A program made the translations under genes and the position numbers. DNA of 64,000 nt from Ylistrum balloti. Its lineage: Eukaryota. The stretch covers positions 310,001 through 374,000 of the forward strand of contig NW_026782111.1 in NCBI RefSeq assembly GCF_031769215.1, read 5' to 3'. Within the stretch, counting starts at the first letter, position 1. Each line of letters starts with the position of its first letter. Below, one piece after another: positions 28,490 to 57,600 of this stretch. Under the pieces are notes generated by a model that was not told the origin of the DNA, made no database searches, and saw only the letters and a program-made list of their open reading frames with translations.

Positions 28490-28650
28490 GCTTTGATATT
28501 AATTATACTGCATCATGCATTTGTTTCGACCGTCTAGGACTCGTCAGTAATGCTAAGTGCCTAAATTTTGAAGCCTAGGAGGCGACTCAGGAAATTTCCA
28601 AAGTGATCGAAAGAAACGTAAAAATCTAGATGGGGAGGTGTAATGGCCCC
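28490..28650 (-). mobile_element. HHR carrier element with a single mutated hammerhead (28511-28555)
   Basis: RC TAGCATTACTGACGAGTCCTAGACGGTCGAAACAAATGCATGATG; its 5' flank (ATCTAGATTTT...CGATCACTTT...CCTAGGCTTCAAAATTTAG) is shared with 46940-47030 and 31085-31132. Confidence 0.75.
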
Positions 28651-29727: not shown

Positions 29728-30739
29728 TGTTTTCCTTCAGAATCATTGATGTCGTGTTTACAGGGTGAAGATTATCTAAGTACATATCTCAAAGAAAACA
29801 ACACGTGATCAGGTAAACAATATAAAATAGACCCATTACATGAGATACACATTGGCCCTTTAGGAATCTTTTGATAAACATCACAACCAGATGTGGATTG
29901 AATATTGACGGGAATGCAAGTCTTTTATCGCGTTGAAATGTCACATATGCTCATATATCTTAAAATAAGATATCGGTTCACTGAATGTACGCCTAATTTG
30001 ATGTGAAGACATCCGAGATGTAAAGCGTGCCTTGTCGTAAGTAGGCGAGACCAGAAACACTCGTTTCGATTCATCATTTTTCTTTGTACTTAAATGTTTT
30101 TATTCTTATTCTTGGTATCCACCCAGTTGTATGGATCAATGACTCCTTCTTCGCTTTATTCATCTTTTATAAATAGTATTTTATTGTCATGCCTTTTTTC
30201 TAATATTCAGACTCCCTGTTGTACATGTATGCATTTCACCGAAACCAGACGTACACCAGCGTGTTGTTCAAAGGGTAAACATGTGAAAAGTACATTTCAA
30301 TACAAACATTTAACACCGTTACACAACTGTTTCATTCTTCTAGGTTTCATCAGAGCCTTATGGGTTGAAATTCAGGAGGCAATTCAGGCAAGTTGGTCGA
30401 AATCAAATTAGTAGAATGGCATCTCACTTTCTTTTAATGTACATTTCTTCTCAGTTGTTTTCACTAAATCAATCAACATGTATTGTTCTATCCATGCATT
30501 ACGTTTCATCTTGATTTATCGGTATGGAAACTTGGGATTCGTTACGGGTTGCATCTGGATATCGTATCGAGTAAGAATCGATTTCTAACATCCTGTACAG
30601 GTATGATGAGACACTATTCAGAATACTAACATACTCGAAAGTGCTCGACATTCGTTTGTTTGCAATTATCCAATATTTTGATATGAAATTAATCAATTGT
30701 GGGATTAGTGTACCTTCACATCATATTCGGATTTCCCCG

Positions 30740-30830
30740 TCACCTACAAGATTTTAATAATTTAGACCCTCAGCATCACTGACGAGGCTTAGAAGGACGA
30801 AACTTGCCGTAATGTGCAGTTCGGTTCATT
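30740..30830 (+). mobile_element. HHR carrier element, solo decayed hammerhead (30771-30816)
   Basis: TTTAGACCCT-CAGCATCACTGACGAGGCTTAGAAGGACGAAACTTGCCGTAATGTGCAGTT. Confidence 0.7.
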
Positions 30831-31084
30831 GTTCGTTTCTCCTTTGGTCTAAGTTTGAATTGAAATGTGTGTTTTGTACAATATCTTCCTCAGCACTTTG
30901 AAGATGTTAGACACAGCAGATAGACGTTTAGTCCTTGTGATTCAACGTAGCCGACAAACCACGTTTAGACCAATGGAAATAGTAGCACGATTAAGAATAT
31001 AGACACACACTTGTCGTTCTGATGAAATCATTCGAAATAAAATTTTAATGAAATTTATTGAAATTTGAGTTTAGTGCATCTCCT

Positions 31085-31235
31085 CAATTTAGATTTTCTC
31101 AGTTACCTCCTAGGTTTCAACCATTTAGACCCTTATCTGACTGGATAATCCTAAGAGGACGAAACAGTGGTATGGTGCTGTTCAATTCATTATTTCACTC
31201 TGCTGTATTGAAAAGTGCTATTCACTTATGTGTCT
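31085..31235 (+). mobile_element. HHR carrier element with both flanks, core destroyed
   Basis: CCTCCTAGGTTTCAACCATTTAGACCCTTA...ATCCTAAGAGGACGAAACAGTGGTATGGTGCTGTTCAATTCATT...GAAAAGTGCTATTCACTTATGTGT; the last motif recurs at 44649-44672. Confidence 0.65.
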
Positions 31236-33479: not shown

Positions 33480-36400
33480 CATACCGTGACGAAGGATTCA
33501 ACAGTACCGAAGATGTTTACCGTGACGGAGGACTCAATAGTACCGAAGCTGTATACAGTGACGGAGGACTCAATAGTACAGAACGTATATACAGTGAGGG
33601 ATGACTCAATAGTACCGAAGGTGTTTACAGTGACGGAGGACTCAATAGTACCAAAGGTGTTTACAGTGACGAAGGACTCAATAGTACCGAAGCTGTATAC
33701 AGTGACGGAGGACTCAATAGTACAGAACGTATATACAGTGAGGGAGGACTCAACAGTACCGAATCTGTATACAGTGAGGGATGACTCAATAGTACAGAAC
33801 ATATATACAGTGACAGAGGACTCAATAGTACCGAAGGTTTATACAGTGACGGAGGACTCAATAGTAATGAAGGTTTATACAGTGACGGAGGACTCAATAG
33901 TACCAAGGGTTTATACAGTGACGGAGGACTCGACAGTACCGAAGGTTTATACAATGACGGAGGACTTAATAGTACCGAAGGTTTATACAGTGACGGAGGA
34001 CTCAAAAGTACCGGAGGTGTTCACAGTGGCGGAGGACTCAATAGTACCGAAGGTGCATACAGTGAAGATGGACTCAATAGTACTGAAGGAGTATACAGTG
34101 ACGGAGAACTCAATATTACTGAAGCTGTATAGTGTGACGGAGAACTCAATACTACCGAAGGTGTTTTCAGTGACGGAGGACTCAGCAGTATCGAAGGTGT
34201 ATACAGTGACGGAGGACTCAATAGTACCGAAGGTTTATACAGGGACGGAGGACTTAATAGTACCGAAGGTGTTTACAGTGACGGTAGGCGGAGGACTTTA
34301 TAGTACCGAAGCTGTCTACTGTGACGAAGGACTCAATGGTACTGAAGGTGTATACAGTAACGGAGGACTCAATAGTACCGAAGCTGTATACTGTGACGGA
34401 GGACTCAATAGTACCGAAATTATATAGAATGAGGGAGGACTCAATAGTACCGAGGCTGTATACAGTGACAGAGGACTCAATAGTACCGAAGCTGTATACT
34501 GTGACGGAGGACTCAACAGTACCGAAATTATATAGAATGAGGGAGGACTCAATAGTGCCGAGGCTGTATATAGTGACAGAGGACTCAATAGTACCGAAGG
34601 TGTTTACAGTGACGGAGGACTCAATAGTACCAAAGGTGTTTACAGTGACGAAGGACTCAATAGTACCGAAGCTGTATACAGTGACGGAGGACTCAATAGT
34701 ACAGAACGTATATACAGTGAGGGAGGACTCAACAGTATCGAATCTGTATACAGTGAGGGATGACTCAATAGTACAGAACATATATACAGTGACAGAGGAC
34801 TCAATAGTACCGAATGTTTATACAGTGACGGAGGACTCAATAGTAATGAAGGTTTATACAGTGACGGAGGACTCAATAGTACCGATTCAGTGACGGACTC
34901 AAAAGTACTGAAGGTGTTTACAGTGACGGAGGACTCAAAAGTACTGAAGGTGTTTAAAGTGACGGAGGGCGGGGGACTCAATGGTACTGAAGGTGTACAC
35001 AGTGACGGAGGACTCGACAATACCGTAGTTATATACAGTGACGGAGGACTCAAAAATTCGAAGGCATATAGAGGGGCGGGGGATTCGACAATACCGTAGT
35101 TATATACAGTGACGGAGGACTCGACAATACCGTAGTTATATACGGAGACGGAGGACTCGACAGTATCGTAGTTATATACGGAGACGGAGGACTCGACAGT
35201 ACCGTAGTTATATACGGAGACGGAGGACTCGACAGTACCGTAGTTATATAAAGTGACGGAGGACTCGACAATACCGAAGGTTTATACAGTGACGGAGGAC
35301 TCAATAGTACCAAAGGTGTTTACAGTGACGAAGGACTCAATAGTACCGAAGCTGTATACAGTGACGGAGAAGGTTTATACAGTGACGGAGGACTCGACAG
35401 GGATACCGAAGAACATATATACAGTGACAGAGGATCAATAGTACCGAATGTTTATACAGTGACGGAGGACTCCACAGATTCGAAGGTTTATACAGTGACG
35501 GAGGACTTAATAGTACCGAAGGTTTATACAGTGACGGAGGACTTAATAGTACCGAAGGTTTATACAGTGACGGAGGACTCGACAGTACCGTAGTTATATA
35601 CAGTGACGGAGGACTCGACAGTACCGTAGTTATATACAGAGACGGAGGACTCGACAGTACCGTAGTTATATACAGAGACGGAGTACTCAACAATGCCGTA
35701 GTTATATACGGAGACGGAGGACTCGACAGTACCGTAGTTATATACGGAGACGGAGGACTCGACAGTACCGTAGTTATATACAGTGACGGAGGACTCGACA
35801 ATACCGAAGGTTTATACAGTGACGGAGGACTTAATAGTACCGAAGGTTTATACAGTGACGGAGGACTCAATAGTACCGAAGGTTTATACAGTGACGGAGG
35901 ACTTAATAGTACCGAAGGTTTATACAGTGACGGAGGACTTAATAGTACCGAAGGTTTATACAGTGACGGAGGACTTAATAGTACCGAAGGTTGATTCAGT
36001 GACAGAGGACTCGACAGTACCGAAGGTTTATACAGTGACGGAGGACTTAATAGTACCGAAGGTTTATACAGTGACGGAGGACTCGACAGTACCGAAGGTT
36101 TATACAGTGACGGAGGACTTAATAGTACCGAAGGTTTATACAGTGACGGAGGACTCAATAGTACCGAAGGTTTATACAGTGACGGAGGACTTAATAGTAC
36201 CGAAGGTTTATACAGTGACGGAGGACTCGACAATACCGAAGGTTTATACAGTGACGGAGGACTTAATAGTACCGAAGGTTTATACAGTGACGGAGGACTC
36301 GACAGTACCGTAGTTATATACAGAGACGGAGGACTCAACAATGCCGTAGTTATATACAGAGACGGAGGACTCGACAGTACCGTAGTTATATACAGAGACG

Positions 36401-37010
36401 GAGGACTCGACAGTACCGTAGTAATATACAGAGACGGAGTACTCAACAATGCCGTAGTTATATACAGAGACGGAGGACTCGACAGTACCGTAGTTATATA
36501 CAGTGACGGAGGACTCGACAGTACCGTAGTTATATACAGAGACGGAGGACTCGACAGTACCGTAGTTATATACAGTCGTAGTTATATACAGAGACGGAGG
36601 ACTCGACAGTACCGTAGTTATATACAGTGACGGAGGACTCGACAGTACCGTAGTTATATACAGAGACGGAGGACTCGACAGTACCGTAGTTATATACAGA
36701 GACGGAGGACTCGACAGTACCGTAGTTATATACAGAGACGGAGGACTCGACAGTACCGTAGTTATATACAGAGACGGAGGACTCGACAGTACCGTAGTTA
36801 TATACAGAGACGGAGGACTCGACAGTACCGTAGTTATATACAGTGACGGAGGACTCGACAGTACCGTAGTTATATACAGAGACGGAGGACTCGACAGTAC
36901 CGTAGTTATATACAGTGACGGAGGACTCGACAATACCGTAGTTATATACAGAGACGGAGGACTCAATGATATCGACGGAGGACTTAATAGTACCGTAGCT
37001 GTATACATTG
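33480..37010. repeat. 36-bp minisatellite, close to 100 copies, two variant classes
   Basis: Units GTGACGGAGGACTYAATAGTACCGAAGGTTTATACA and GAGACGGAGGACTCGACAGTACCGTAGTTATATACA; 12-aa periodic ORFs result. Confidence 0.97.
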
Positions 37011-38364
37011 ACAGATGATGAAAGGCTGAACAGATCAGATCGAAGAAAACCCGCTTACATACATGCCCTGTGGCTTTTACATGTCTTAGTTTATTCGATA
37101 TACAATAACTTGATTAATGATTAATTATAAATTATCATTCAATCCGGGTTCTCATAGAAAAAAAATCATCGTTTTCTCAATGTGAAAATACCGATTATTT
37201 ATTGACTTGTACTTGTAACTAAAAATTGTCAGCTCAGTCTTCCATGACTTCTCTGAACTGCTTACCAAACAATGTATTAAAATATGTTTAAATGAATAAA
37301 TAAAAAAATTGTTATTCATCTCATTAGTAAACAAATTGTGACTGATTTATCTGAGTTAATTTAAATATTAAGAATATTAATGAGCAATATATTACCTCAT
37401 CTTTGTAACCACAATCGTAATCAGTTACAAAAACGGACATTATAATTATGTTTGAATGTCAAAACTTAATTACATTTACATGTCTTTTTAGTGTGCACCG
37501 TAACTGTCACTCAATAAATAAAAGGAAAAATAGGACAACGTAAGATAAAAAATTTATTACGGCTGAAAATGATATTCAGAATTATAAATCTACAAGATAG
37601 ATTATAATATAAAATTAAAATTAGAAAATTTTAAATGATGTATGTTGTTCTTTTTGAAAGTTAAATTATGAATTATATGAATTTATCTGCTATAACGTGT
37701 ATATAAAACAAACTGATTTGCATAAGTAAATAAGGTACTGAATAATACATAACAATGAAAATCGATATTCATGTCTAACTTTGTTGTATTGCTATTTGTT
37801 TACAAGCTAATATGACAGATACTGGGTAAATAATGTGATGAATGTTTGTTAAGGTATAGGAGTTGTGTATATACAACATCAATATCATTAATCTACACTT
37901 CCTTTTAATAATTATGTTTAAATTTGCATCTTAATTTAATTTGAATCCGCAATATAGAATACAAATAATAAATATGTATCTTATCTGCATGCAAATGAGT
38001 TTGTTATCGTGATAAAGGTTGCGTCTATCGGCGCCTAATAAACAAAAAAAGGTTATGTGAATACATTTCTTGTCACATAGTGTATATTGTATTCTACTAG
38101 AAATATATCATTAAAGTTACTTTGATCTATTTGTATATAGTTTAATAGTATATTACTAAAATTAACCAACCATTCAAAAATTTGTCTAAAACCTTACTGC
38201 TCAGTGACAACGTATGTGTACATTTTAAATCTGTGTCTGTTCCGATTTCCCTGTTATATATTTATAATAGGAAATATCTTCTGTAACTGTACTGTATTTC
38301 ATGGATTACGTTTGTTTCATCGTAAATATTGCATCATTTTCTGCGTAGTGACAATTCAGGCCAT

Positions 38365-39084
38365 CAGCATCACTAGCGAGTCCTAGGAGGACGACCCGGA
38401 TGTATAATGCAACATCACTGATAAATCCTAGAAGGATGAAACAGTTGTATGATGTAATTTCGCTGACGAGTTCTAGAAGGACGAAACATCGGTATGGTGC
38501 AGTATCATCGACGAGTCCCTAGAAGGACGAAACAGTTGTATGATGTAGCATCATTGAAGAGTCCTAGAAGGACGAAAGTGGTGTATGATTTAGCATTACT
38601 GACGAGTTCTAGAAGGACGAAACAGTTGTATGATGTAGCATCATTGAAGAGTCCTAGAAGGACGAAACTGGTGTATAATTTAGCATTACTGACGAGTTCT
38701 AGAAGGACGAAACAGTTGTATGATGTAGCATCATTGAAGAGTCCTAGAAGGACGAAACTGGTGTATGATTTAGCATTACTGACGAGTTCTAGAAGGACGA
38801 AACAGTTGTATGATGTAGCATCATTGAAGAGTCCTAGAAGGACGAAACTGGTGTATGATTTAGCATTACTGACGAGTTCTAGAAGGACGAAACTGGTGTA
38901 TGATGTAACATCACTGACTCGTCTTATAAGGACGGAATAGATGCATGATGCAGCATCACTGACGAGTCCTAGAAAGACAAAACAGCTGTATGATGTAGCA
39001 TTACTGACGAGTTCTAGAAGGACGAAACAGTTGTATGAAGTTATATCACTGACGAGTCCTAGAAGGACGAAACAGTATATGATG
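38365..39084 (+). ncRNA. Tandem array of 16 x 45-nt hammerhead ribozyme units with a 90-bp A/B higher-order repeat
   Basis: Same module as 11988-12438. B-type units (e.g. 38591-38635, 38681-38725, 38771-38815) read TAGCATTA-CTGACGA-GTTC-TAGAA-GGAC-GAA-ACAGTTGT-A-TGATG, with an intact core and G.U wobbles. A-type units have a TTGAAGA core and ACTGGTGT stem III. Confidence 0.88.
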
Positions 39085-41989
39085 CAGTTTAATTCATTAC
39101 TATTTGTTTATGCTGTATCTGATTCTAAATTTGTATCGAAAAATGCTATATATATTTCATTTTATTTTGTAGAAACTTATGTTAAATTGAATTAACTAAC
39201 CGTGTAAACTCCAGGAACCCTTACCCTTTTTACTCGCAAGAGATTTGATAAATAAGCAATGCATTCGTAATGTTATATCCAAAAATAGGCAGCAAAACTG
39301 GATATCTGGAGCGTCGTCCTTGGTTCATATACAATTTGATAACCTTTTATTTATAAACTCAGCTTGTGCAAATAACGCATCATGACTAGGCATGTGACGT
39401 CATCGCGCGTGTAAATGTTAAATTGATTTCATTCATCGTGTCTTCAAAATGACCTTCATTCAGGTACGGAAGTTATGTCTTTGAGTAGTCACATTACAGA
39501 TGCGTCCAGGATTTGGAATGGTATGAATAAATGAATAATTTTTTCAGATTCAATAAAGAAACGAAACGGAAAATATCCCATTTAGGTTGACTGTTGATCA
39601 TGTCTTTTTCTAGTTGGGATTTATAAATATGGTTACAAGGAGTTGATGTTTTGTCAGTGTTAAAGTTGTATATCGAAGTTAAGGTCCCACCTAGTTTATT
39701 TTGTCTAAACTGTTAATTGTTTCCCGCTCAAAGTTAATTAACACAGAGAAGTTTCTCTCAGAATTTGTTCGGTATTATAATTTCAAAAAGTACTGTGTAA
39801 TGATAAAGTATCTTATACTACTACTAACTTAACTTGCTTCTAAAACTGAAACTAATGCCAGTTTAATCATTAACATGGTATTTTTGTACAATACTTTACA
39901 CGAGCTGAAAATTGTTTCGGAAAAATGAATTCTGAAACAAAGAGGTTTAGATTTTACATGAAACATATTTGACGAATTAATATCCCCACTACCGCCTAAA
40001 ATATAATTCGTGAAATATTGGGACACGTGTGTAAAGATTTGTTTGAAATGAAAATCGCGAAAATGCTGACCCGTGAAAATTATCAGCCATAAAGTATGTG
40101 GTCTTTCATTAGTTTTATTACATACTTCACGAAATAGGTGTTGTGAAAAAAACTGAGAGGATTACAAAATAAGACAGTAGATTTCGCTTCAGTCTCCTAA
40201 GAATTTATTTCGTTACATGGATCGACGTTCGGCCTCAGAGGCGATTTTCATTGGCGTTTATATCGGAAGTTCAAATAAGAATGTTTAAAAATATAGATTT
40301 GATAAGCAATGGTCAAATAGATTCTGGCAATTTTTGATAATAATCAAAATAATTCCAGACGTTTTTGCCTACATCCATCATTTATTCTGTTATGTTCTAT
40401 TGTTATTCTGAATTCTCTTTGTGCGGTCCTGAATTTTTATCACAATGTAGTCATATACTCATCATTTCAGAATTAAATTGATCAACAAAAGTTACAACTT
40501 TGCAAAACTGTAGTCGCCATATGGTTAAACAAATTAAAATTACCACCCTTTAGCCTCATCAGAATATCTGGTGTCTCTACAAGTAATTGATAACCGAGGA
40601 CGAAAGAGGTGCATCGGTGATATAAATATAGGGATCACACAATTATTATGTTCATAACTGTACACAGACTGTGCATGGCACACACCACTACGGAACCCCA
40701 TCAGTAAATAATGTCACATTGTTTAATTAAGGCATATTTCAGCCCCATAGCTCAAACATCAGTTTCGCGTAACAGCATATGCGCGTGGACAAATCAAATT
40801 AACGCTAAGGGAAGCAGAAGATTACAGACTGAAGTTGAAGGTGGGCGGAAGCGAATATTTTGGGATCTTTTATGACAGGTAGGGGGCCTATAATCAAATA
40901 CCCTATTAGGGTCCATTAGTCACGCGAAATGGTCAATGTGTAAAATGGTCCTCGGTAGGAGTGGATATGTGATCATGCCCAGCCGGGTGCAGCGTCAAGC
41001 TTGCAGATGAATATGATGTGTAAATTTAACTAATTGTTATATTAAATAAACCGTTGTGGTGACTATTTGATCGGCGCTGTATGTGTTCAAATGGGTAGAT
41101 GTCCTAATGTATCTTTAAGTACAATGGTGAATAAAGGTGGGCGGGTCTGGATCTCTGTGTGTCCCCAATGAAGATGATAACCAAAGCCGACTGTCAACCA
41201 CTAACCCAACAGATCGGTAGGGGCCGACCATACCATCAAAGGAGACCTGACCCGACACGGAGGGTTACTAATTATAGAGCAGGTGGACGAGAGGAAACCA
41301 AGTAAAGCGGTGTAATTGATATTCGCTTCGCTTCACTATGATACAGTGTAACCAGGCAGATCCTCTAATTGAAAGTTTGATGCTCTACTATCTCTCTTCT
41401 TCCGAACCCCTTTTCAGTTTTGTATTTTCAATACAGTACACCAGCCACAACGAAGATAGTACACTTTAAAATCTAGATTTTCCAATCATTGCTAGATTTC
41501 CTAACTTGTTTCATAATTAATAAGTGATCAGACGAAAAAAGGTTTATGACGTAAATCGCTCCAACAGTTACACTATCCTTTCCCTCACAATCAAATCTCT
41601 AAGCGCTCTGGGATTCATTATAGTTGCGAATGTCGAAATTAGCCTTCTTTTTCTTCTCCAAGTAATATTTCCGAAACTTCAATTAACCGTCTTTTTTAGC
41701 GTTAATTTTCTTTAATTGGGAAACTTTTCTACGACGTAAATGGTGATAGTAATAGCCCGGCATGTTAGAATATGTGCCATTTACTGAGGCCGCTACAGAC
41801 AATGAATGTTCGGCAGTCGACCTTTGTTCATTAAGACTTGACAACTATAGGGAATGTATTACACAGCCACTCACCAAGAACACATAAATGGTTGTAGATA
41901 TAATGATTAGTATATACCTACCAGCCTACATCTACATTTGTAAACGAAACAAAACCAATTGGTACAGAACCAATTAACAATACTGTGAT

Positions 41990-44524: not shown

Positions 44525-44675
44525 CCTACGTTTCAACACTGAAAGCCCCTAGCATCACTGACGATTCCTTGAATAACAAAACACCTGTATGTATGATGCA
44601 GTTCATTTCATTATTCTGCAATACGATATCTAATTCTAATTTGCTTTTGAAAAGTGTCATTCACTTATGTGTGGT
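44525..44675 (+). mobile_element. HHR carrier element, decayed hammerhead (44550-44598)
   Basis: CCCCTAGCATCACTGACGATTCC...ACACCTGTATGTATGATGCAGTTCATTTCATT...GAAAAGTGTCATTCACTTATGTGT. Confidence 0.65.
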
Positions 44676-45577
44676 TTGTATAATCCTTCGTTCATTGCGG
44701 CTGCAAGATTCGTTTTAAATTAAAATCCATTGTACTGAAAATGCTAGTTTTGTTGAAACATATTCCCCTTTTACAACCCATGTATATTGTGCCATTGGAA
44801 GAATTTAAAAGGTACAAAAAATTTATTATCCTTTGAGGCTGTTTAATATTCCAAATTATATCGTTATCAAGAAAGTCCATCAAAAAGGTTTCGAAACCCA
44901 GAATCTAGTTTATTACGCATACAGTATAACAATTGAGAAGTCGTAATAAAAGTCACTTGGTGACAACATGTAGGTAAATTATGAAATTATTAGCATACAC
45001 GTGACAACAGACACCTGAAATACCTTAAATGTTGGTGTCATGTTATTTTGTAATGAAATTTAGATTAAAAGAATATTTACAGTCTACTCAAATTCATGAT
45101 AATTGCTATGTAAACTGACATTTTATATGCAACTAGTTGGCTCACAAAACGTGTTTTTTTACAATGATATCGTTAACAATTGACAAAATATTAATTTGTT
45201 CTGGTATAGGTGTGTGCTTATACATGTATGCAAAACGAAATATACATATTTATGATTTTATTTGTATAAGAAAAGTGAATTAAGCAATGAAGGGTGTGTA
45301 TGTGTTCCTGCTTGCTTGACGGTCTTGTTGGTCGAATGCGACATACGATGCGAGTTATAAGTAATAAATGGAGTGCATTCCTTATAAAATGGCTTCCTTT
45401 AAAAGTATGATACATTTTATCTCGAAATAGAATAAAATACTAACATATTTAAATGATATACACGGTAAGCGAACCACTAGGCATATTCATTAAGAACATA
45501 AAACATACAAATATATTTAAATTATATGCATGTAAACGGACCGATTTATGTTTTCCGTTAATGAAATAATTCAAGTG

Positions 45578-46583
45578 ATATACAGAGTAAACGGACCTCT
45601 TTGCATATCATCCCTGAGTAGTATAAAATTCACTATCATATCTAAATGATATTCACCGTAAACGGACCTTTTCACGTCATCCATGAGTAGTATAAGAATC
45701 ACTATCATATCTAAAGGATATTCACCGTAAACGGACCTTTTCACGTCATCCATGAGTAGTATAAAATTCAATCACTAATTGATATCATATCTCATCCAAG
45801 GATGATATACACCGTAAACGGACCTTTTCACGTCATCCATGAGTAGTATAAAATTCACTATCATATCTAAATGATTTTCACCGTAAACGGACCTTTTCAC
45901 GTCATCCATGAGTAGTATAAAATTCACTATCATATCTAAATGATTTTCACCGTAAACGGACCTTTTCACGTCATCCATGAGTAGTATAAAATTCACTATC
46001 ATATCTAAATGATATACACCGTAAACGGACCTTTTCACGTCATCCATGAGTAGTATAAAATTCACTATCATATCTAAATGATATACACCGTAAACGGACC
46101 TTTTCACGTCATCCATGAGTAGTATAAAATTCACTATCATATCTAAATGATATACACCGTAAACGGACCTTTTCACGTCATCCATGAGTAGTATAAAATT
46201 CACTATCATATCTAAATGATATACACCGTAAACGGACCTTTTCACGTCATCCATGAGTAGTATAAAAATCACTATCATATCTAAAGGATATACACCGTAA
46301 ACGGACCTTTTCACGTCATCCATGAGTAGTATAAAATTCACTATCATATCTAAATGATATACACCGTAAACGGACCTTTTCACGTCATCCATGAGTAGTA
46401 TAAAATTCACTATCATATCTAATTGATATACACCGTAAACGGACCTTTTCACGTCATCCATGAGTAGTATAAAATTCACTATCATATCTAAATGATATAC
46501 ACCATAAACGGACCTTTTCACGTCATCCATGAGTAGTATAAAATTCACTATCATATCTAAATGATATACACCGTAAACGGACC
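45578..46583. repeat. 69-bp minisatellite, about 14.5 near-identical copies
   Basis: Unit ATATACACCGTAAACGGACCTTTTCACGTCATCCATGAGTAGTATAAAATTCACTATCATATCTAAATG; TAAACGGACC recurs every 69 bp from 45815 to 46574. Confidence 0.97.
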
Positions 46584-46879
46584 TATCGATATTTTCATTA
46601 GGCTGAACATTGTGCAAAGTTTGAAAAGCTGTTGCGACTAATTTCCGGTTTTTTTGTTTTTTTTTTTAGAATGGGATTTTCGAATTGCAGTGGTCCGAAT
46701 ATGATGTTGAAACACACATGGAACTTCATTTCAAAGATATGAGAATAACATAACTTAAACAAATCTATATATGATATAACTACCAGGGCCACGCTTTCAA
46801 CAGATTTTACAAAATACACACAGGAGAACAACATCTTTTAATAATTTCGAGTTAGGAGTTGAGATACAGTAGAACCAAA

Positions 46880-47035
46880 CAATTAATTAAACTGCATCAT
46901 ATAGCTGTTTTGTCCTTCTAGACCTCGTCAGTGATGTCAAGGGTCTACATTTTGAAGCCTAAAGGGCGAGTGATGAAAATAAAAAGTGATCGGAAGAAAG
47001 GTCAAAATCTAGACGGCGAAGTGCAGCAGCCCTTA
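46880..47035 (-). mobile_element. HHR carrier element, solo hammerhead (46895-46939) with long 5' flank
   Basis: RC GACATCACTGACGAGGTCTAGAAGGACAAAACAGCTATATGATGCAGTTTAATT; the flank matches 28560-28640 and 61335-61395. Confidence 0.72.
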
Positions 47036-54157: not shown

Positions 54158-54609
54158 CTATGACGTCACTGCGTCATGTTCTGTGTCTGAGTTGTTATTC
54201 TCCCTGTCCGACAAACAGGTGTTTTCCTTCTCGGAACTTTCCTGATCACTTTCTAAACAGCTCTTAGATAATTTGGCTGGAGATGGTTCAGACTCACTGT
54301 CCATATCGCTATCATGATGAGTTTCTTCATCTGTTTCAAGCTTTGAATGGACTACGTCATTTTTCAGCTCTTCGAGATCACGTTTAAGTTTTGCACGCCT
54401 GTTCTGAAACCATGTTATAACTTGTGCATTTGTCAAACCAAGCGTTTGAGCGATTTCGTCTCTATCAGCCGGTGTTAAATACTTCTGGTATAAAAATCTT
54501 TTTTCGAGTTCATATATTTGTTGGTTTGTAAATGCTGTTCTTGATTTTCTTCGCTTCTTTGGTGGTTGGTGTTTCCCAAACAATGCGGCTTGTTCACGTC
54601 TTTTGGCGT
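54158..54609 (-). CDS. Lbx: Ladybird (Lbx) homeobox transcription factor, last coding exon (homeodomain at about 54374-54553)
   Basis: Translation KHQPPKKRRKSRTAFTNQQIYELEKRFLYQKYLTPADRDEIAQTLGLTNAQVITWFQNRRAKLKRDLEELKNDV matches the diagnostic Lbx homeodomain and its flanks (TWFQNRRAKLKRDLEE). A pyrimidine-rich acceptor (TTGTTTTATTTACTATTTCAG) ends at 54610, giving a phase-1 exon start. Acidic Ser-rich tail and TAG stop at 54160-54158. Confidence 0.96.
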
Positions 54610-57600
54610 CTGAAATAGTAAATAAAACAAATGGGTTACACATAATTGATAGAAAAGTATGACATGCATATTTGCGTGTTGCAATATCATATATCATCTT
54701 AATAACATCAATTAATTTCAAATAAATGACTGTATAGAATGCCACAAATCAATGCCGAAATGCCTCATTAATCACGAAATCATATATGAATATTTCCAAC
54801 TTAAAGCCAATACAATAATAGTCGAGAGCACTTTTAAGGTTCGGCAAAACAAGTAAGAAATACCATTCTGATTGCCAGCAGTATTATTTTTATATCAGTT
54901 ATTTGAACATAAAAAAGACATATATGGATGCAGTTTTAATGCGTTGATGAATATTAATGTATGTATTATACCAAGCGTAAAGGTGGATTTTTGTGGTCTC
55001 TGTTGTTTGATGGTAAATGTTTTATGAAAGCAAAAATGCACAAAGAGATAAATTGATCGATATATTTTAATACATTTGACTTTAAGAGTACACATGTATA
55101 CTAGCCTTGCTGCCAGTTATCTTAGTGAAAATGACATTCAATACTGCCATGTACCCTATACTGTATATCTTTACTTGTATGGCTTCCCATCATCATTGCT
55201 AGTCATCAAAAACAGTTTCATGATAGAACTAAAAATTGACACGAAAAAAGGAAATTGTTATATTTACTGGTATCAAGAACGTATTAAACTATTAAAATGT
55301 ATTACCAAGTTCCAGGTTACTGTATCGTTGGGTATTTTAGTGGGGTAATATTTCCGCTTTTTCGCGGTACATTAACGTGATCGCGAAAATTTAATTCATT
55401 GTGAATGAAAATCACAAAAATTACTAGCTATACGGTATCATGTAAGTATTCAACTGATTCGTCTTAAATGTTAAACACAATCGGCAGTATAGGGAATACC
55501 AGTACAACTCTTGCCATGTCTTTTTTAACATAAGAAGTGCAGTGGTTGTATTTGTAAGCTATGTTGACTTTGCAATCTATGACACTGTTGTTTGGATTTT
55601 TCCTAAAATAATATTTACTTCAGCGTAATTAAATGAGAAATTTTCGTTCATCGTTCACCTACGTTATCCATCAGTTAACTTGATATAATATATATATGTA
55701 TATCTAAGATGAATCTCATTTACAGAGAAGTCACGTGCCAGAGTAACATACACCCTTAAAACAACATTAAAGGTTGTAACCATGGCCTTATATCAAGTTT
55801 TCTTTGTATAATCTATCTTATTTTCTGATTAAAGAAGAAAAACATTTCCTGAATAACTAAATGTCTTTAATCTTTAAGGGGAAAAAATGACCTTTTTAGG
55901 TTTTTTTGTCTGTTCCTTTTGTTAAAGAAAGATCTCATTCTAATTGTGTTAGTCTGATATAAGATCGATTTTGTCAATTACCACAGTAACGAAAATGATT
56001 GTGTGTTCGAGCAAATACCATCGATGTGTCTAGAAAACCTAAGTGGCGCTATAGGATTACGTTAGAAAGACTATTGTAGACAATGGAAGATATATATATT
56101 GGGTTTAGTTAAGCATTAGGTATTAAATACCTAAGCGCTGTCGTCTTGCGATCGTGTTTTGAAGCCAAAACGATATATTTACACTGACAGTGGTAAGATA
56201 AGCTTTCAACGAAGCCCTTGAAGATGTATACATGTTTTTGTCGTGTTTGTTGCCGACTATACCGACCAACCCAATTACAGAAGCATATCATTTGTATTGA
56301 AAACGGTTAATAGAGAATTACTGTTGCTTCAAATTTGTGGTTGAACATTGCAATGTCCCAATTGGCGGCATCTTCGGGGATTTTTTTAGTATTTTAATAA
56401 TGTTAGAGTTAGCTTGTTACGGTCTTGACGACAGCTAACAGTCAAGCTGCCAAAGAAAATTAGATGTTTAAATTCGCAAATGAAAGAGTACATAGGGCTT
56501 GTAGCCATTTCAACAATCCATTTGTTCTCCGAATAAATCAAGTGCGCGAGATGGTTTAATATGCACATAAAATACGACTTATTGAATATCGGCTATCAAG
56601 GAATGCCAGCACTAGGATGGCGTGCTTTATTGCTACTGTTACTAACACCACAGATGTATGAGGAAACATTGTTTTCAATGTTTAATGTCTGAACCTCTAA
56701 TAGGAGGTGAAGAGGTCCCGTGCTTGTGTGAGGTCCACGTGTGTCGTTGCTGGCCTGTCAGCATTATACTGAGCCTAGTGTGTTTTTAACAGAGTATCAA
56801 GCCTGTCGCCTAGACGTATACAGTGTACCATATGGCTCTTAATTTTCACTTACATTTTCCATTAAACTATCATCATTACCATTTTTATTAGTTTAAGGTA
56901 CATTGCTTCGGTCAGACATCAGATAAAAAAAATGTTCTTTTTCTTAAAGGGGTGGGGGGGATGGGGTTTGGTGGTGGTTTGGGGGTATGGTTATGGAAAT
57001 GTAATTTTCATGACTTTATTACATCAGTTGTTAAAATTTAAGTTTAAAGGAACCTTATATTCAATATACGAAGATAAATATTTCTATTTAATCTGAATAT
57101 ATGGACACTGAGAGAAAAAGCATCCTCAAAAACAGTGTAAATGGTTAAAGTATGAAGCTTAAAACGTTGTGAAAAGAAGAACTCTTTCAAATACAGCATG
57201 TACCTGTTCTTTATCGGTTCTCTGTATGTGTTTTTTTCGTTTGTTCATATGTTGTCCTACTTTTTTAAAATTTGACGTTGGATAATGATTATGTTGACAT
57301 GTTAATATTTTCTTGTTGTATCTTTATTCCCATGCTCTTTACACATAACCAGCAAATATACGATTGTGATATAAATTGAGTTATTGAAAGTATTGTCACT
57401 TTTGCATCTCATCGACGTTTACCGTACATTTAACGTGTCTTATAAAAACATTTTCAGAAACACCTAACCTGAAGGCCGAGGTACACTTAGTAAACTTTCC
57501 AGTTATTGCCCCAAAAAAGTCGGCAGGTGTTAACATACGTTCATGTTAATTAAAGTCATCAATTTAATTAAAATTGGAAGTTTTTGTTTAAAGATATGTT

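What the first reader, a model, noticed from the sequence alone, without database searches (positions are those of the whole stretch)
38365..39084. Second, apparently independent hammerhead array (16 units) with alternating intact and impaired 90-bp dimers
Seen: units from 38546 to 38905 alternate A (TTGAAGA core, ACTGGTGT stem III) and B (CTGACGA, GTTC/GGAC wobble stem II, ACAGTTGT) four times. Diagnostic variants (GTTC, TAGAA, ACAGTT) differ from array 1 (GTCC, AAGAA, ACAGCT/ACAGAT). Unit 38410-38454 shows a compensatory ATCC/GGAT stem II. Array 1 also has a dimer duplication (units 4-5 resemble 6-7). Inference: two separate insertions 26 kb apart each expanded the same module, often in steps of two units, which fits either a dimeric active form or 90-nt spacing between working cut sites.
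Basis: partly seen in the sequence, partly recalled or inferred. Interest (0 to 1): 0.82.

Follow-up and report, generated by a model that had tools for sequence, protein, structure and literature searches.

The report
Decaying hammerhead-ribozyme minisatellite, 90-bp higher-order repeat
This 720-base stretch is 16 back-to-back copies of a 45-base self-cutting RNA motif that grew, as ordinary repeat DNA, out of the single ribozyme of a small mobile element; its tidy two-unit (90-base) pattern is a recent DNA duplication of one dead and one weakened copy, not evidence of a working pair.

Summary
Window 38366-39085 is 16 x 45 bp type-I hammerhead (HHR) units. Units 5-12 (38547-38906) are four near-identical 90-bp A-B dimers (98.1% identity at lag 90, 84.1% at lag 45).

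- **Two separate expansions: supported.** Both arrays sit at the single-HHR slot of a dispersed ~270-nt non-coding element, have no other flank homology, and their units mostly cluster by array.
- **A functional reason for the 90-bp step: not supported.**
  - A units carry C3->U and a non-complementary helix III.
  - B units keep the core but have G-U wobbles in all three helices. None reaches the Rfam cut-off (best 23.9 bits against 34).
  - Only 7 of 16 units keep a full core.
  - Core positions change as often as loops.
  - The one compensatory pair (ATCC/GGAT) lies in a unit with a broken core and is no more than shuffles give.
  - No RNA run was found.

The best reading is a neutral minisatellite born from a retrozyme/Penelope-type HHR, with a young higher-order repeat made by unequal exchange.

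An HHR-only 45-bp repeat is shorter than the published 150-450-bp ribozyme repeats. Earlier notes of this scan report such arrays on other DNA of this genome. Interest is modest.

The parts
38366..39085 (+). Array 2: 16 head-to-tail 45-bp type-I hammerhead units (one unit is 46 bp, one is 44 bp)
   Evidence: TRF; unit parsing; weak Rfam Hammerhead_1 hits of 13.8-23.9 bits
38366..38546 (+). Left edge units 1-4: old and diverged, 5-8 differences from the family consensus. Unit 2 (38411-38455) has the ATCC/GGAT pair but a G8->A core. Only unit 3 keeps a full core, with poor helices I and III.
   Evidence: (lag-45 identity 0.59); the left-flank contigs run to 38455, through the first two units
38547..38906 (+). 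Young higher-order repeat: 4 x 90 bp (A-B)
   Evidence: lag-90 identity 98.1% against lag-45 identity 84.1%; 90-mers differ by 1-3 bases
38547..38591 (+). A unit. The other A units are 38637-38681, 38727-38771 and 38817-38861. Core TTGAAGA (C3->U, N7=A), helix III ACTGGTGT not self-complementary, helix I 3' strand TGATTT.
   Evidence: the A-unit minimum-energy fold (-10.6 kcal/mol) pairs UGGUGU with the helix I strand GCAUCA, while the hammerhead fold scores -2.3
38592..38636 (+). B unit. The other B units are 38682-38726, 38772-38816 and 38862-38906. Intact CUGACGA/GAAA core, with G-U wobbles in helix I (AGCATTA), helix II (GTTC/GGAC) and dimeric helix III (ACAGTTGT). The fourth B (38862-38906) carries the A-type ACTGGTGT, so it is a chimera or conversion product.
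   Evidence: Rfam 23.9 bits against a cut-off of 34; hammerhead fold -1.6 against a minimum-energy fold of -8.1 kcal/mol
38907..39085 (+). Right edge units 13-16. Unit 13 is heavily mutated, unit 14 has G12->A and a helix II mismatch, unit 15 is B-type, and unit 16 has a 1-nt deletion in helix III.
   Evidence: the right-flank contigs start at 39049 in four runs
39086..39200 (+). Downstream arm of the host element (CAGTTTAATTCAT...CTGTATCT...), shared with array 1 and the solo copies
   Evidence: alignment A2; blast of arr2R against arr1R, s46895 and s17248 gives 77-84% identity; the genome-wide loose-end consensus is CAGTTTAATTCATTGTTTGGCTCTACTGTA
38340..38365 (+). Remnant of the upstream arm of the host element (..GACAATTCAGGCCATC against the consensus ..CAACAATTTAGGCCCTT). 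Further upstream it is diverged or 5'-truncated.
   Evidence: alignment A1; blast of arr2L against s30772 covers 588-629
11989..12439 (+). Array 1: 10 x 45 bp in another copy of the same element, with both arms recognisable. One unit passes the Rfam cut-off.
17247..17485 (-). Third multi-unit locus: two HHR units in the same register, the first split by a ~150-nt insertion
46894..46938 (-). Solo HHR in a copy of the host element. Further solo or fragmentary copies are at 3021-3065(-), 28510-28554(-), 30316-30360(-), 30772-30816(+), 31134-31178(+) and 44551-44598(+).

Best explanation
Array 2 is a DNA-level minisatellite that grew in place from the single type-I hammerhead of one copy of a dispersed, ~270-nt non-coding retroelement (retrozyme-like or Penelope-derived).

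**Origin (inferred).** The first duplication joined the 3' end of helix I to its 5' start. The motif is flanked by a short direct repeat (T/C)AG and is itself a compact inverted-repeat structure, which would favour slippage in this register.

**Growth (inferred from the pattern).** Later growth was by replication slippage or unequal exchange.
- The edge units are old and diverged.
- The centre was recently overwritten by four copies of a 90-bp pair made of one core-dead unit (A) and one weakened unit (B). This is an ordinary higher-order repeat.
- One patch of gene conversion shows in the last B unit.

**Function.** The array is drifting neutrally. If transcribed, at most units 6, 8, 10 and 15 could attempt cleavage, and only by pairing helix III with another unit. 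Nothing indicates that the 90-bp step is selected.

**Shown:** the anatomy, the periodicity, the host element, the separate flanks, and the lack of constraint.
**Inferred:** the slippage and unequal-exchange mechanism, and neutrality.
For: - **Host element.** About ten copies lie in the window, sharing an upstream arm (..CCTCCTAGGTTTCAAAATTTAGGCCCTT) and a downstream arm (CAGTTTAATTCAT..CTGTATCT..), usually around a single HHR. Contigs from four public DNA runs give the same two arm consensus sequences as loose ends on either side of a single unit.
- **Abundance.** Summed contig depth is 5-17 on the unique flanks and up to about 7e5 on HHR bins. That tool states this figure is no copy number, so it indicates only that the motif is highly repeated.
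- **In-place growth.** Arrays 1 and 2 begin and end exactly at the element's HHR slot, and no other flank homology was found.
- **Separate homogenisation.** Units cluster mostly by array.
- **Age pattern.** Edge units differ from the consensus at 5-9 positions. The central 90-mers differ from each other at 1-3 positions.
- **No constraint.**
  - Distinct substitutions per column in array 2 are 1.0 for the core, 0.77 for stems and 1.09 for loops.
  - There is 1 double-sided pair change in 324 cells, a count reached by 465 of 500 shuffles.
  - The three B-specific changes are all C->T, each leaving a G-U wobble.
- **Weak ribozyme signal.** Rfam scores are 13.8-23.9 bits against a cut-off of 34. 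Only 7 of 16 units keep an intact core, and only 4 of 16 also have usable helices.
Against: - **Recurrence in one register.** The same 45-nt unit has multiplied in the same register at three independent loci in this window (arrays 1 and 2, and 17.3 kb). Earlier unchecked notes report many more in the genome. Purely random slippage would not always pick the ribozyme's exact borders. My (T/C)AG microhomology plus hairpin explanation is an inference.
- **No RNA data.** No RNA data set was available, so transcription and cleavage are untested, neither shown nor excluded.
- **Thin phylogenetic signal.** With 45 columns the unit tree is poorly resolved: 15 of 24 inner branches are open.
- **Interior unverified.** The array interior could not be checked in other individuals because short-read contigs collapse it.
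Confidence: 0.72

Rival explanations
1. Tandem hammerheads are useful to the mobile element. Because this ribozyme type has only a 2-bp helix III with a palindromic loop and needs a partner, extra adjacent copies would supply the partner in cis and speed self-processing of the element's transcript. Arrays, and two-unit steps, would then be favoured in source elements or soon after insertion, and array 2 would be a decayed remnant of such a cassette.
For: - The architecture is the dimer-dependent one: helix III AC/GU plus a 4-nt palindromic loop.
- Published work says such motifs cleave poorly alone and better as dimers or in tandem (PMC4209133, PMC6765202).
- Neighbouring units can also complete a type-III-like hammerhead across the junction, with weak Rfam Hammerhead_3 hits and junction helix III of 3-4 bp in many unit pairs.
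- Three of about ten element copies in the window have two or more units.
Against: - The amplified dimer contains a core-dead A unit whose helix III pairs with neither A nor B: two or four mismatches in eight positions, and no full 8-bp helix III in the duplex fold.
- There is no covariation and no protection of the core.
- Most copies seen in the window and in public contigs carry a single unit.
- Each array has its own private variants, so most units arose after insertion.
Confidence: 0.12
2. RNA-level origin. Cleaved 45-nt units (or 90-nt units where only B cores cut) are ligated into tiny circles or multimers and copied by a retroelement reverse transcriptase in rolling-circle fashion. The multimeric cDNA then replaces or extends the resident ribozyme by recombination. 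The 90-bp period would record the spacing of working cut sites.
For: - The repeat unit equals the ribozyme exactly, at several independent loci.
- A rolling-circle route through circular RNA is the proposed life cycle of retrozymes (PMC7229834; bioRxiv 10.64898/2026.07.22.740005).
- With A cores dead, predicted cut sites in the central block are 90 nt apart.
Against: - Both arrays keep the host element's arms and stay in register with older, diverged edge units. That is expected for growth in place and needs an extra recombination step under this model.
- Published ribozyme circles are 170-400 nt or longer, and no 45-90-nt ones were found in the papers read (PMC7229834).
- B units are thermodynamically poor hammerheads.
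- There are no RNA data.
Confidence: 0.08
3. One array arose once and was copied to the second site by a segmental duplication, so the two arrays are not independent.
For: Both arrays lie on the + strand, 26 kb apart, with the same unit. One array-1 unit (u10) groups with array-2 units in the tree.
Against: - No flank similarity was found beyond the short, diverged host-element arms (no hits at E<1e-3).
- Private variants are homogenised within each array: AAGAA and ACAGAT in array 1, GTTC and ACAGTT in array 2.
- a1_u10 is simply the unit closest to the family consensus, with 1 difference.
- The AU test does not reject array 1 as one group (p=0.29).
Confidence: 0.03

Closest known systems
Metazoan non-LTR retrozymes (tandem repeats with type-I hammerheads; Cervera & de la Pena 2020, PMC7229834)
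   Same: - Type-I hammerhead with a 6-bp helix I, a 4-bp helix II, and a 2-bp helix III capped by a palindromic tetraloop.
- AT-rich, non-coding, dispersed and tandem copies in an invertebrate genome.
- One pair of host elements in the window sits at 363-bp spacing, close to the 350-390 bp reported for mussel.
   Different: - The repeat unit here is the 45-nt ribozyme alone. Published units are 150-450 bp and carry a long non-ribozyme body that becomes loop 1 of the circle.
- No RNA or circle evidence was obtained here.
- Most units are mutated.
Minimal hammerheads of Penelope-like element pseudo-LTRs (Cervera & de la Pena 2014, PMC4209133; review PMC6765202)
   Same: Retroelement-borne, massively repeated, dimer-dependent hammerheads with a short palindromic helix III. 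Copies occur in direct and inverted neighbourhoods, as at 30316-31178 here.
   Different: - The described min-HHRs have a long helix II (6-8 bp, with a bulge), a short helix I, and little or no helix III. Here helix II is 4 bp and helix I is 6 bp.
- No reverse transcriptase or GIY-YIG ORF was found among the ORFs I scanned.
[quoted passage not shown]
Double-hammerhead self-cleavage of newt satellite 2 and avocado sunblotch viroid (Forster et al. 1988, as cited in PMC4209133)
   Same: An unstable helix III that can be extended by pairing two copies. Array 1's ACAGCUGU self-duplex is predicted at -13.1 kcal/mol.
   Different: In array 2 the extended helix is weak: B with B gives -5.4 kcal/mol with two G-U pairs, and A units cannot form it.
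Higher-order repeats of satellite and minisatellite DNA (unequal crossing-over model)
   Same: Alternating diverged monomers, near-identical multimers, homogenised centre and diverged edges, and a chimeric unit at the block's border.
   Different: Nothing mechanistic. The only unusual feature is that the monomer is a complete ribozyme motif.

Membership tests
Hammerhead ribozyme, type I (Rfam RF00163) | Conserved core: CUGANGA, GAAA, the A15.1-U16.1 pair, and H17 not G | tested here: met
   Met by 7 of 16 units (3, 6, 8, 10, 12, 15, 16). The other 9 units carry core substitutions, and A units have C3->U. H17 is A in all 16 units.
Hammerhead ribozyme, type I (Rfam RF00163) | Three helices around the core in type-I topology | tested here: met
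   90.4% of pair cells form standard pairs, against 17-50% when the partners are slid. Helix III is only 2 bp plus a 4-nt loop, so it needs a partner. Only units 6, 8, 10 and 15 combine a full core with usable helices.
Hammerhead ribozyme, type I (Rfam RF00163) | Score at or above the Rfam gathering threshold (34 bits) | tested here: not met
   Array 2 units score 13.8-23.9 bits. In array 1, one unit reaches 34.8 bits and the rest score 23.5-32.1.
Hammerhead ribozyme, type I (Rfam RF00163) | Self-cleavage at the predicted site | not testable with these tools
   No RNA run holds the locus. The only reads laid were DNA contigs.
Metazoan non-LTR retrozyme | Tandem repeat unit of about 150-450 bp: one type-I HHR plus a non-ribozyme body | tested here: not met
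   The array unit is 45 bp, the ribozyme alone. The host element is about 270 nt, with one direct pair at 363-bp spacing. The host may qualify; the array does not.
Metazoan non-LTR retrozyme | Expressed as self-processed linear and circular RNA | not testable with these tools
   No RNA runs were found.
Penelope-like element pseudo-LTR hammerhead | Lies in the terminal repeat of an element that encodes RT and a GIY-YIG endonuclease | tested here: inconclusive
   Pfam on 10 window ORFs gave no RT or GIY-YIG hit. Only ORFs of at least 89 aa were scanned, and non-autonomous copies need no ORF nearby.
Penelope-like element pseudo-LTR hammerhead | min-HHR architecture: helix II of 6-8 bp with a 5' bulge, a short helix I, and minimal or absent helix III (PMC4209133) | tested here: not met
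   Helix II is 4 bp, helix I is 6 bp, and helix III is 2 bp plus a tetraloop. This is the 'canonical metazoan type-I' form of that paper.
Higher-order repeat (satellite DNA) | Identity at the multimer lag clearly above identity at the monomer lag | tested here: met
   98.1% at lag 90 against 84.1% at lag 45 in 38547-38906. The signal is weak in array 1, at 89.2% against 86.5%.

The most novel reading that the evidence does not exclude
The 45-bp arrays are not just decaying DNA. They would be (or recently were) cis-complementing ribozyme cassettes: adjacent units supply each other's helix III, as a double hammerhead or as a type-III-like fold across the unit junction. A transcript would then be diced into 45-nt RNAs, or 90-nt RNAs where every second core is dead. 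These RNAs could circularise and be copied back by a retroelement reverse transcriptase. That would make them the smallest ribozyme-defined replicating units known in an animal genome, and it would explain why exactly the ribozyme is the repeat unit at many independent loci.
Probability: 0.08. Interest if true: 0.75.

Novelty: new variant of a known kind. Interest (0 to 1): 0.33.

Why it matters
Hammerhead-bearing repeats of animals are known as 150-450-bp units that yield circular RNAs. A repeat shrunk to the 45-nt ribozyme itself, arising repeatedly at separate copies of one mobile element, is an unusual end-point.

It also raises a question that can be tested: why do the repeat's borders coincide with the ribozyme's? 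The cause could be DNA structure or RNA processing.

For this particular array the answer is sobering. Its neat A/B alternation is what unequal exchange makes of any minisatellite, and most units are dead. Its main value is as one data point for a genome-wide census, and as a warning against reading function into higher-order periodicity.

Tried and rejected
- **Segmental duplication of one array.** Rejected: the flanks show no homology at E<1e-3.
- **Selection on pairing.** Rejected on present data. There is one compensatory cell in 324, within the shuffle expectation. It lies in a unit with a G8->A core, and its C11.1->U half is a CpG transition. The ATCC variant also occurs uncompensated in array-1 units 4 and 6 and at the 17.4-kb locus.
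- **A and B complementing each other's helix III.** Rejected by direct pairing. A-with-B leaves 2 mismatches in 8 positions, and the junction helices are 2-3 bp. The duplex fold gives no full 8-bp helix III.
- **RNA evidence.** One run search found only DNA or unlabelled contig sets. The laid contigs resolve the flanks, not the array interior.
- **Autonomous element nearby.** Pfam on 10 ORFs found no RT or endonuclease. The ZoocinA, Pre-PUA and Ble-like hits are low-complexity artefacts of ORFs inside other satellites.
- **Literature.**
  - Lunse et al. 2017 (PMC5785218) and de la Pena & Garcia-Robles 2010 are not held.
  - Searches for hammerhead plus bivalve, scallop or minisatellite gave nothing relevant.
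  - 'Not described' therefore rests on a limited search.
- **Genome-wide census of arrays and their periods.** Not possible: no tool reaches the rest of this genome. Only unchecked scan notes are available.
- **Organism.** Run organisms are coded. 'Scallop' comes from earlier notes and was not verified here.

Full report
**1. What is there**

Tandem Repeats Finder reports a 45-bp repeat of 16.0 copies at 38366-39084 (79% matches, score 869). It reports a sister array of 10 copies at 11989-12438 (88% matches). The window has no N. It is AT-rich (about 33% GC), rich in satellites and without long ORFs, so it is eukaryotic DNA.

I parsed each unit into hammerhead parts:
- helix I: AGCAUCA / UGAUGY, 6 bp
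- core: CUGACGA
- helix II: GUCC-UAGAA-GGAC, 4 bp
- GAA
- helix III: AC-AGYU-GU, 2 bp plus a palindromic tetraloop
- A17, then the cut site

The motif is far above chance: CTGANGA-N(8-20)-GAAAC occurs 15 times against 0.43 expected.

Rfam's type-I hammerhead model passes its cut-off at only one unit, in array 1 (34.8 against 34 bits). Array 1 units score 23.5-34.8 bits. Array 2 units score 13.8-23.9 bits.

**2.

Units 5-12 (38547-38906) alternate as follows:
- A units: TTGAAGA, GTCC/GGAC, ACTGGTGT, TGATTT
- B units: AGCATTA, CTGACGA, GTTC/GGAC, ACAGTTGT

Identity is 98.1% at lag 90 and 84.1% at lag 45. The four 90-mers differ at 1-3 positions. The last B carries the A-type ACTGGTGT, so it is a chimera or conversion patch.

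Units 1-4 and 13-16 are much more diverged, with 5-9 differences from the consensus in most. Unit 2 does have ATCC/GGAT.

**3. Ribozyme competence**

Only 7 of 16 units keep the full core (3, 6, 8, 10, 12, 15, 16). Only four of these (6, 8, 10, 15) also have usable helices.

A units have three defects:
- They carry C3->U.
- Their helix III is not self-complementary and does not complement B.
- Their minimum-energy fold (-10.6 kcal/mol) pairs the mutated UGGUGU with the helix I strand, while the hammerhead fold scores -2.3.

B units keep the core, but all three B-specific changes are C->T transitions that leave G-U wobbles in helices I and II and in the extended helix III. Their hammerhead fold scores -1.6 against a minimum-energy fold of -8.1 kcal/mol. 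The B-with-B helix III duplex is -5.4, against -13.1 for array 1's ACAGCUGU.

**4. No sign of selection**

I aligned 30 units (both arrays plus four solo copies). The hammerhead pairing is clearly inherited: 90.4% of cells are paired, against 17-50% in slid controls.

There is just one double-sided change, the ATCC/GGAT unit, and 465 of 500 shuffles do as well. That unit's core is CTGATAA (G8->A). Its C11.1->U half is a CpG transition. ATCC without compensation occurs in array-1 units 4 and 6 and at the 17.4-kb locus.

Core columns are hit as often as the others. In array 2 the distinct substitutions per column are 1.0 for the core, 0.77 for stems and 1.09 for loops. Array 1 gives 0.42, 0.27 and 0.27.

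**5. Surroundings: the module is the ribozyme of a dispersed element**

A blast of the unit against the window finds nine further sites on both strands. Their flanks align:
- about 90 nt upstream, ending ..CCTCCTAGGTTTCAAmAATTTAGGCCCTT
- about 130 nt downstream, starting CAGTTTAATTCAT..CTGTATCT..GAAAAGTGCTATTCACTTATGTGT

This gives an old, non-coding element of about 270 nt whose copies are 70-85% alike.

Arrays 1 and 2 begin and end exactly at that element's hammerhead slot. Array 2's downstream arm is clear. Its upstream arm is recognisable for only about 15-25 nt.

Other loci in the window add to the picture:
- A third locus (17247-17485, minus strand) has two units in the same register, the first split by an insertion of about 150 nt.
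- At 30316-31178 three copies lie together: one inverted, and two direct at 363-bp spacing.

Public DNA contigs of four runs (two coded organism labels) show three things:
- Depth is single-copy (5-17) on the flanks, while summed depth on hammerhead bins reaches about 7e5. The tool warns this is no copy number, so I take it only as 'very abundant'.
- The loose-end consensus sequences on either side of a single unit are identical to the two arms above. The contigs that leave a unit therefore show a solo ribozyme in this element.
- Both flank/array junctions of array 2 (up to 38455 and from 39049) are present in all four runs, with about 1% divergence.

**6. Are the two arrays independent?**

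- No flank similarity beyond the element arms was found.
- In a maximum-likelihood unit tree, 8 of 10 array-1 units and 11 of 16 array-2 units form array-specific groups.
- Array labels are clustered: 0 of 500 shuffles for array 1 and 6 of 500 for array 2 do as well.
- The stragglers are edge units near the family consensus; a1_u10 differs from it by 1 base.
- Holding array 1 together is not rejected (AU p=0.29).
- With 45 columns the tree is weakly resolved, but together with the flanks it supports two separate expansions in place.

**7. Mechanism**

The pattern is that of minisatellite growth by slippage or unequal exchange:
- diverged, fixed edges
- a homogenised centre
- a multimer copied as a block, including a dead unit
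- an in-register chimeric border unit

The recurrent choice of exactly the ribozyme as the unit needs explaining. The motif is bounded by a (T/C)AG direct repeat 45 nt apart and closed by the helix I inverted repeat. I infer that this favours slippage in that register. This step is not shown.

Two RNA-based rivals remain possible but have no positive evidence here: tandem copies kept because they supply the dimer partner, and rolling-circle copying of 45- or 90-nt circles. The amplified dead A unit, the lack of constraint and the retained element arms argue against them. No RNA run was available.

**8. Comparison with what is known**

The helix dimensions match the 'canonical metazoan type-I' hammerhead that works as a dimer. 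They do not match the min-HHR described for Penelope pseudo-LTRs (PMC4209133).

Such ribozymes define the non-LTR retrozymes, whose tandem units are 150-450 bp (350-390 bp in mussel) and are expressed as circular RNAs (PMC7229834). A 2026 preprint derives these from Penelope-like elements (bioRxiv 10.64898/2026.07.22.740005). Naiad-type Penelope elements, which dominate bivalves, lack canonical hammerheads (PMC8557442).

The host element therefore fits the retrozyme/Penelope-derived world, although its exact affiliation is open. The 45-bp ribozyme-only array lies outside the described size range, and I found no description of it in the papers I could search. That search was limited.

**9. Earlier notes of this scan**

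Earlier notes report the same kind of 45-bp array on several other pieces of this genome, mostly read as DNA-level expansion inside a mobile element. One note mentions 4- and 5-unit higher-order repeats, which, if true, speaks against a special role for two units. I used these as leads only. The label 'scallop' comes from them and was not verified here.

**10. Verdict**

- 'Two independent expansions, partly in two-unit steps' is supported.
- 'Dimeric active form or 90-nt cut spacing' is not supported.

This is a real but largely dead hammerhead minisatellite with an ordinary higher-order repeat. It is a modestly interesting variant of a known kind.

Noticed in passing
window 17247-17485 (-): A third locus with two hammerhead units in the same register inside the same host element. 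The first unit is split between GGAC and ACGAAAC by an insertion of about 150 nt.
   Followed up: partly
window 30316-31178: Cluster of three host-element copies: one inverted (30316-30360, minus strand) and two direct at 363-bp spacing (30772 and 31134). The arrangement resembles retrozyme or Penelope-type tandem and inverted insertions.
   Followed up: partly
window 38862-38906: The last B unit of the higher-order block carries the A-type helix III (ACTGGTGT) but B-type helices I and II. It looks like a gene-conversion or crossover chimera at the block's border.
   Followed up: partly
window 33481-36964: A 3.5-kb satellite of 36-bp units with 108-bp higher-order structure (TRF scores up to 3449), 1.4 kb upstream of array 2. 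ORFs run through it on both strands, and their weak Pfam hits look like repeat artefacts.
   Followed up: no
window 45576-46584: A 69-bp satellite (11 copies, 98% matches) lying right beside a solo hammerhead element at 46894-46938 (minus strand). The 'Ble-like_N' Pfam hit of the ORF through it has no single significant stretch and is probably spurious.
   Followed up: no
window 12919-13757: An AACC-rich micro/minisatellite (periods 4, 26 and 56) about 480 bp downstream of array 1. It has a strong negative GC skew.
   Followed up: no
window 57-827: A 28/55-bp G/T-rich satellite (about 28 copies) at the start of the window.
   Followed up: no
window 54158-54745 (-): An ORF with a strong homeodomain (Pfam PF00046, E=6e-22). 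From my own knowledge the sequence (..RKSRTAFTNQQIYELEKRFLYQKYLTPADRDEIAQTLGLTNAQVITWFQNRRAKLKRD..) looks like a ladybird/Lbx-type homeobox terminal exon. The arrays lie 15-42 kb away, on the opposite strand from it.
   Followed up: partly
window 38547-38861 (A units): The A-specific helix III change creates UGGUGU, which pairs perfectly with the unit's own helix I strand GCAUCA (minimum-energy fold -10.6 kcal/mol). This alternative hairpin would trap the RNA away from the hammerhead fold.
   Followed up: partly
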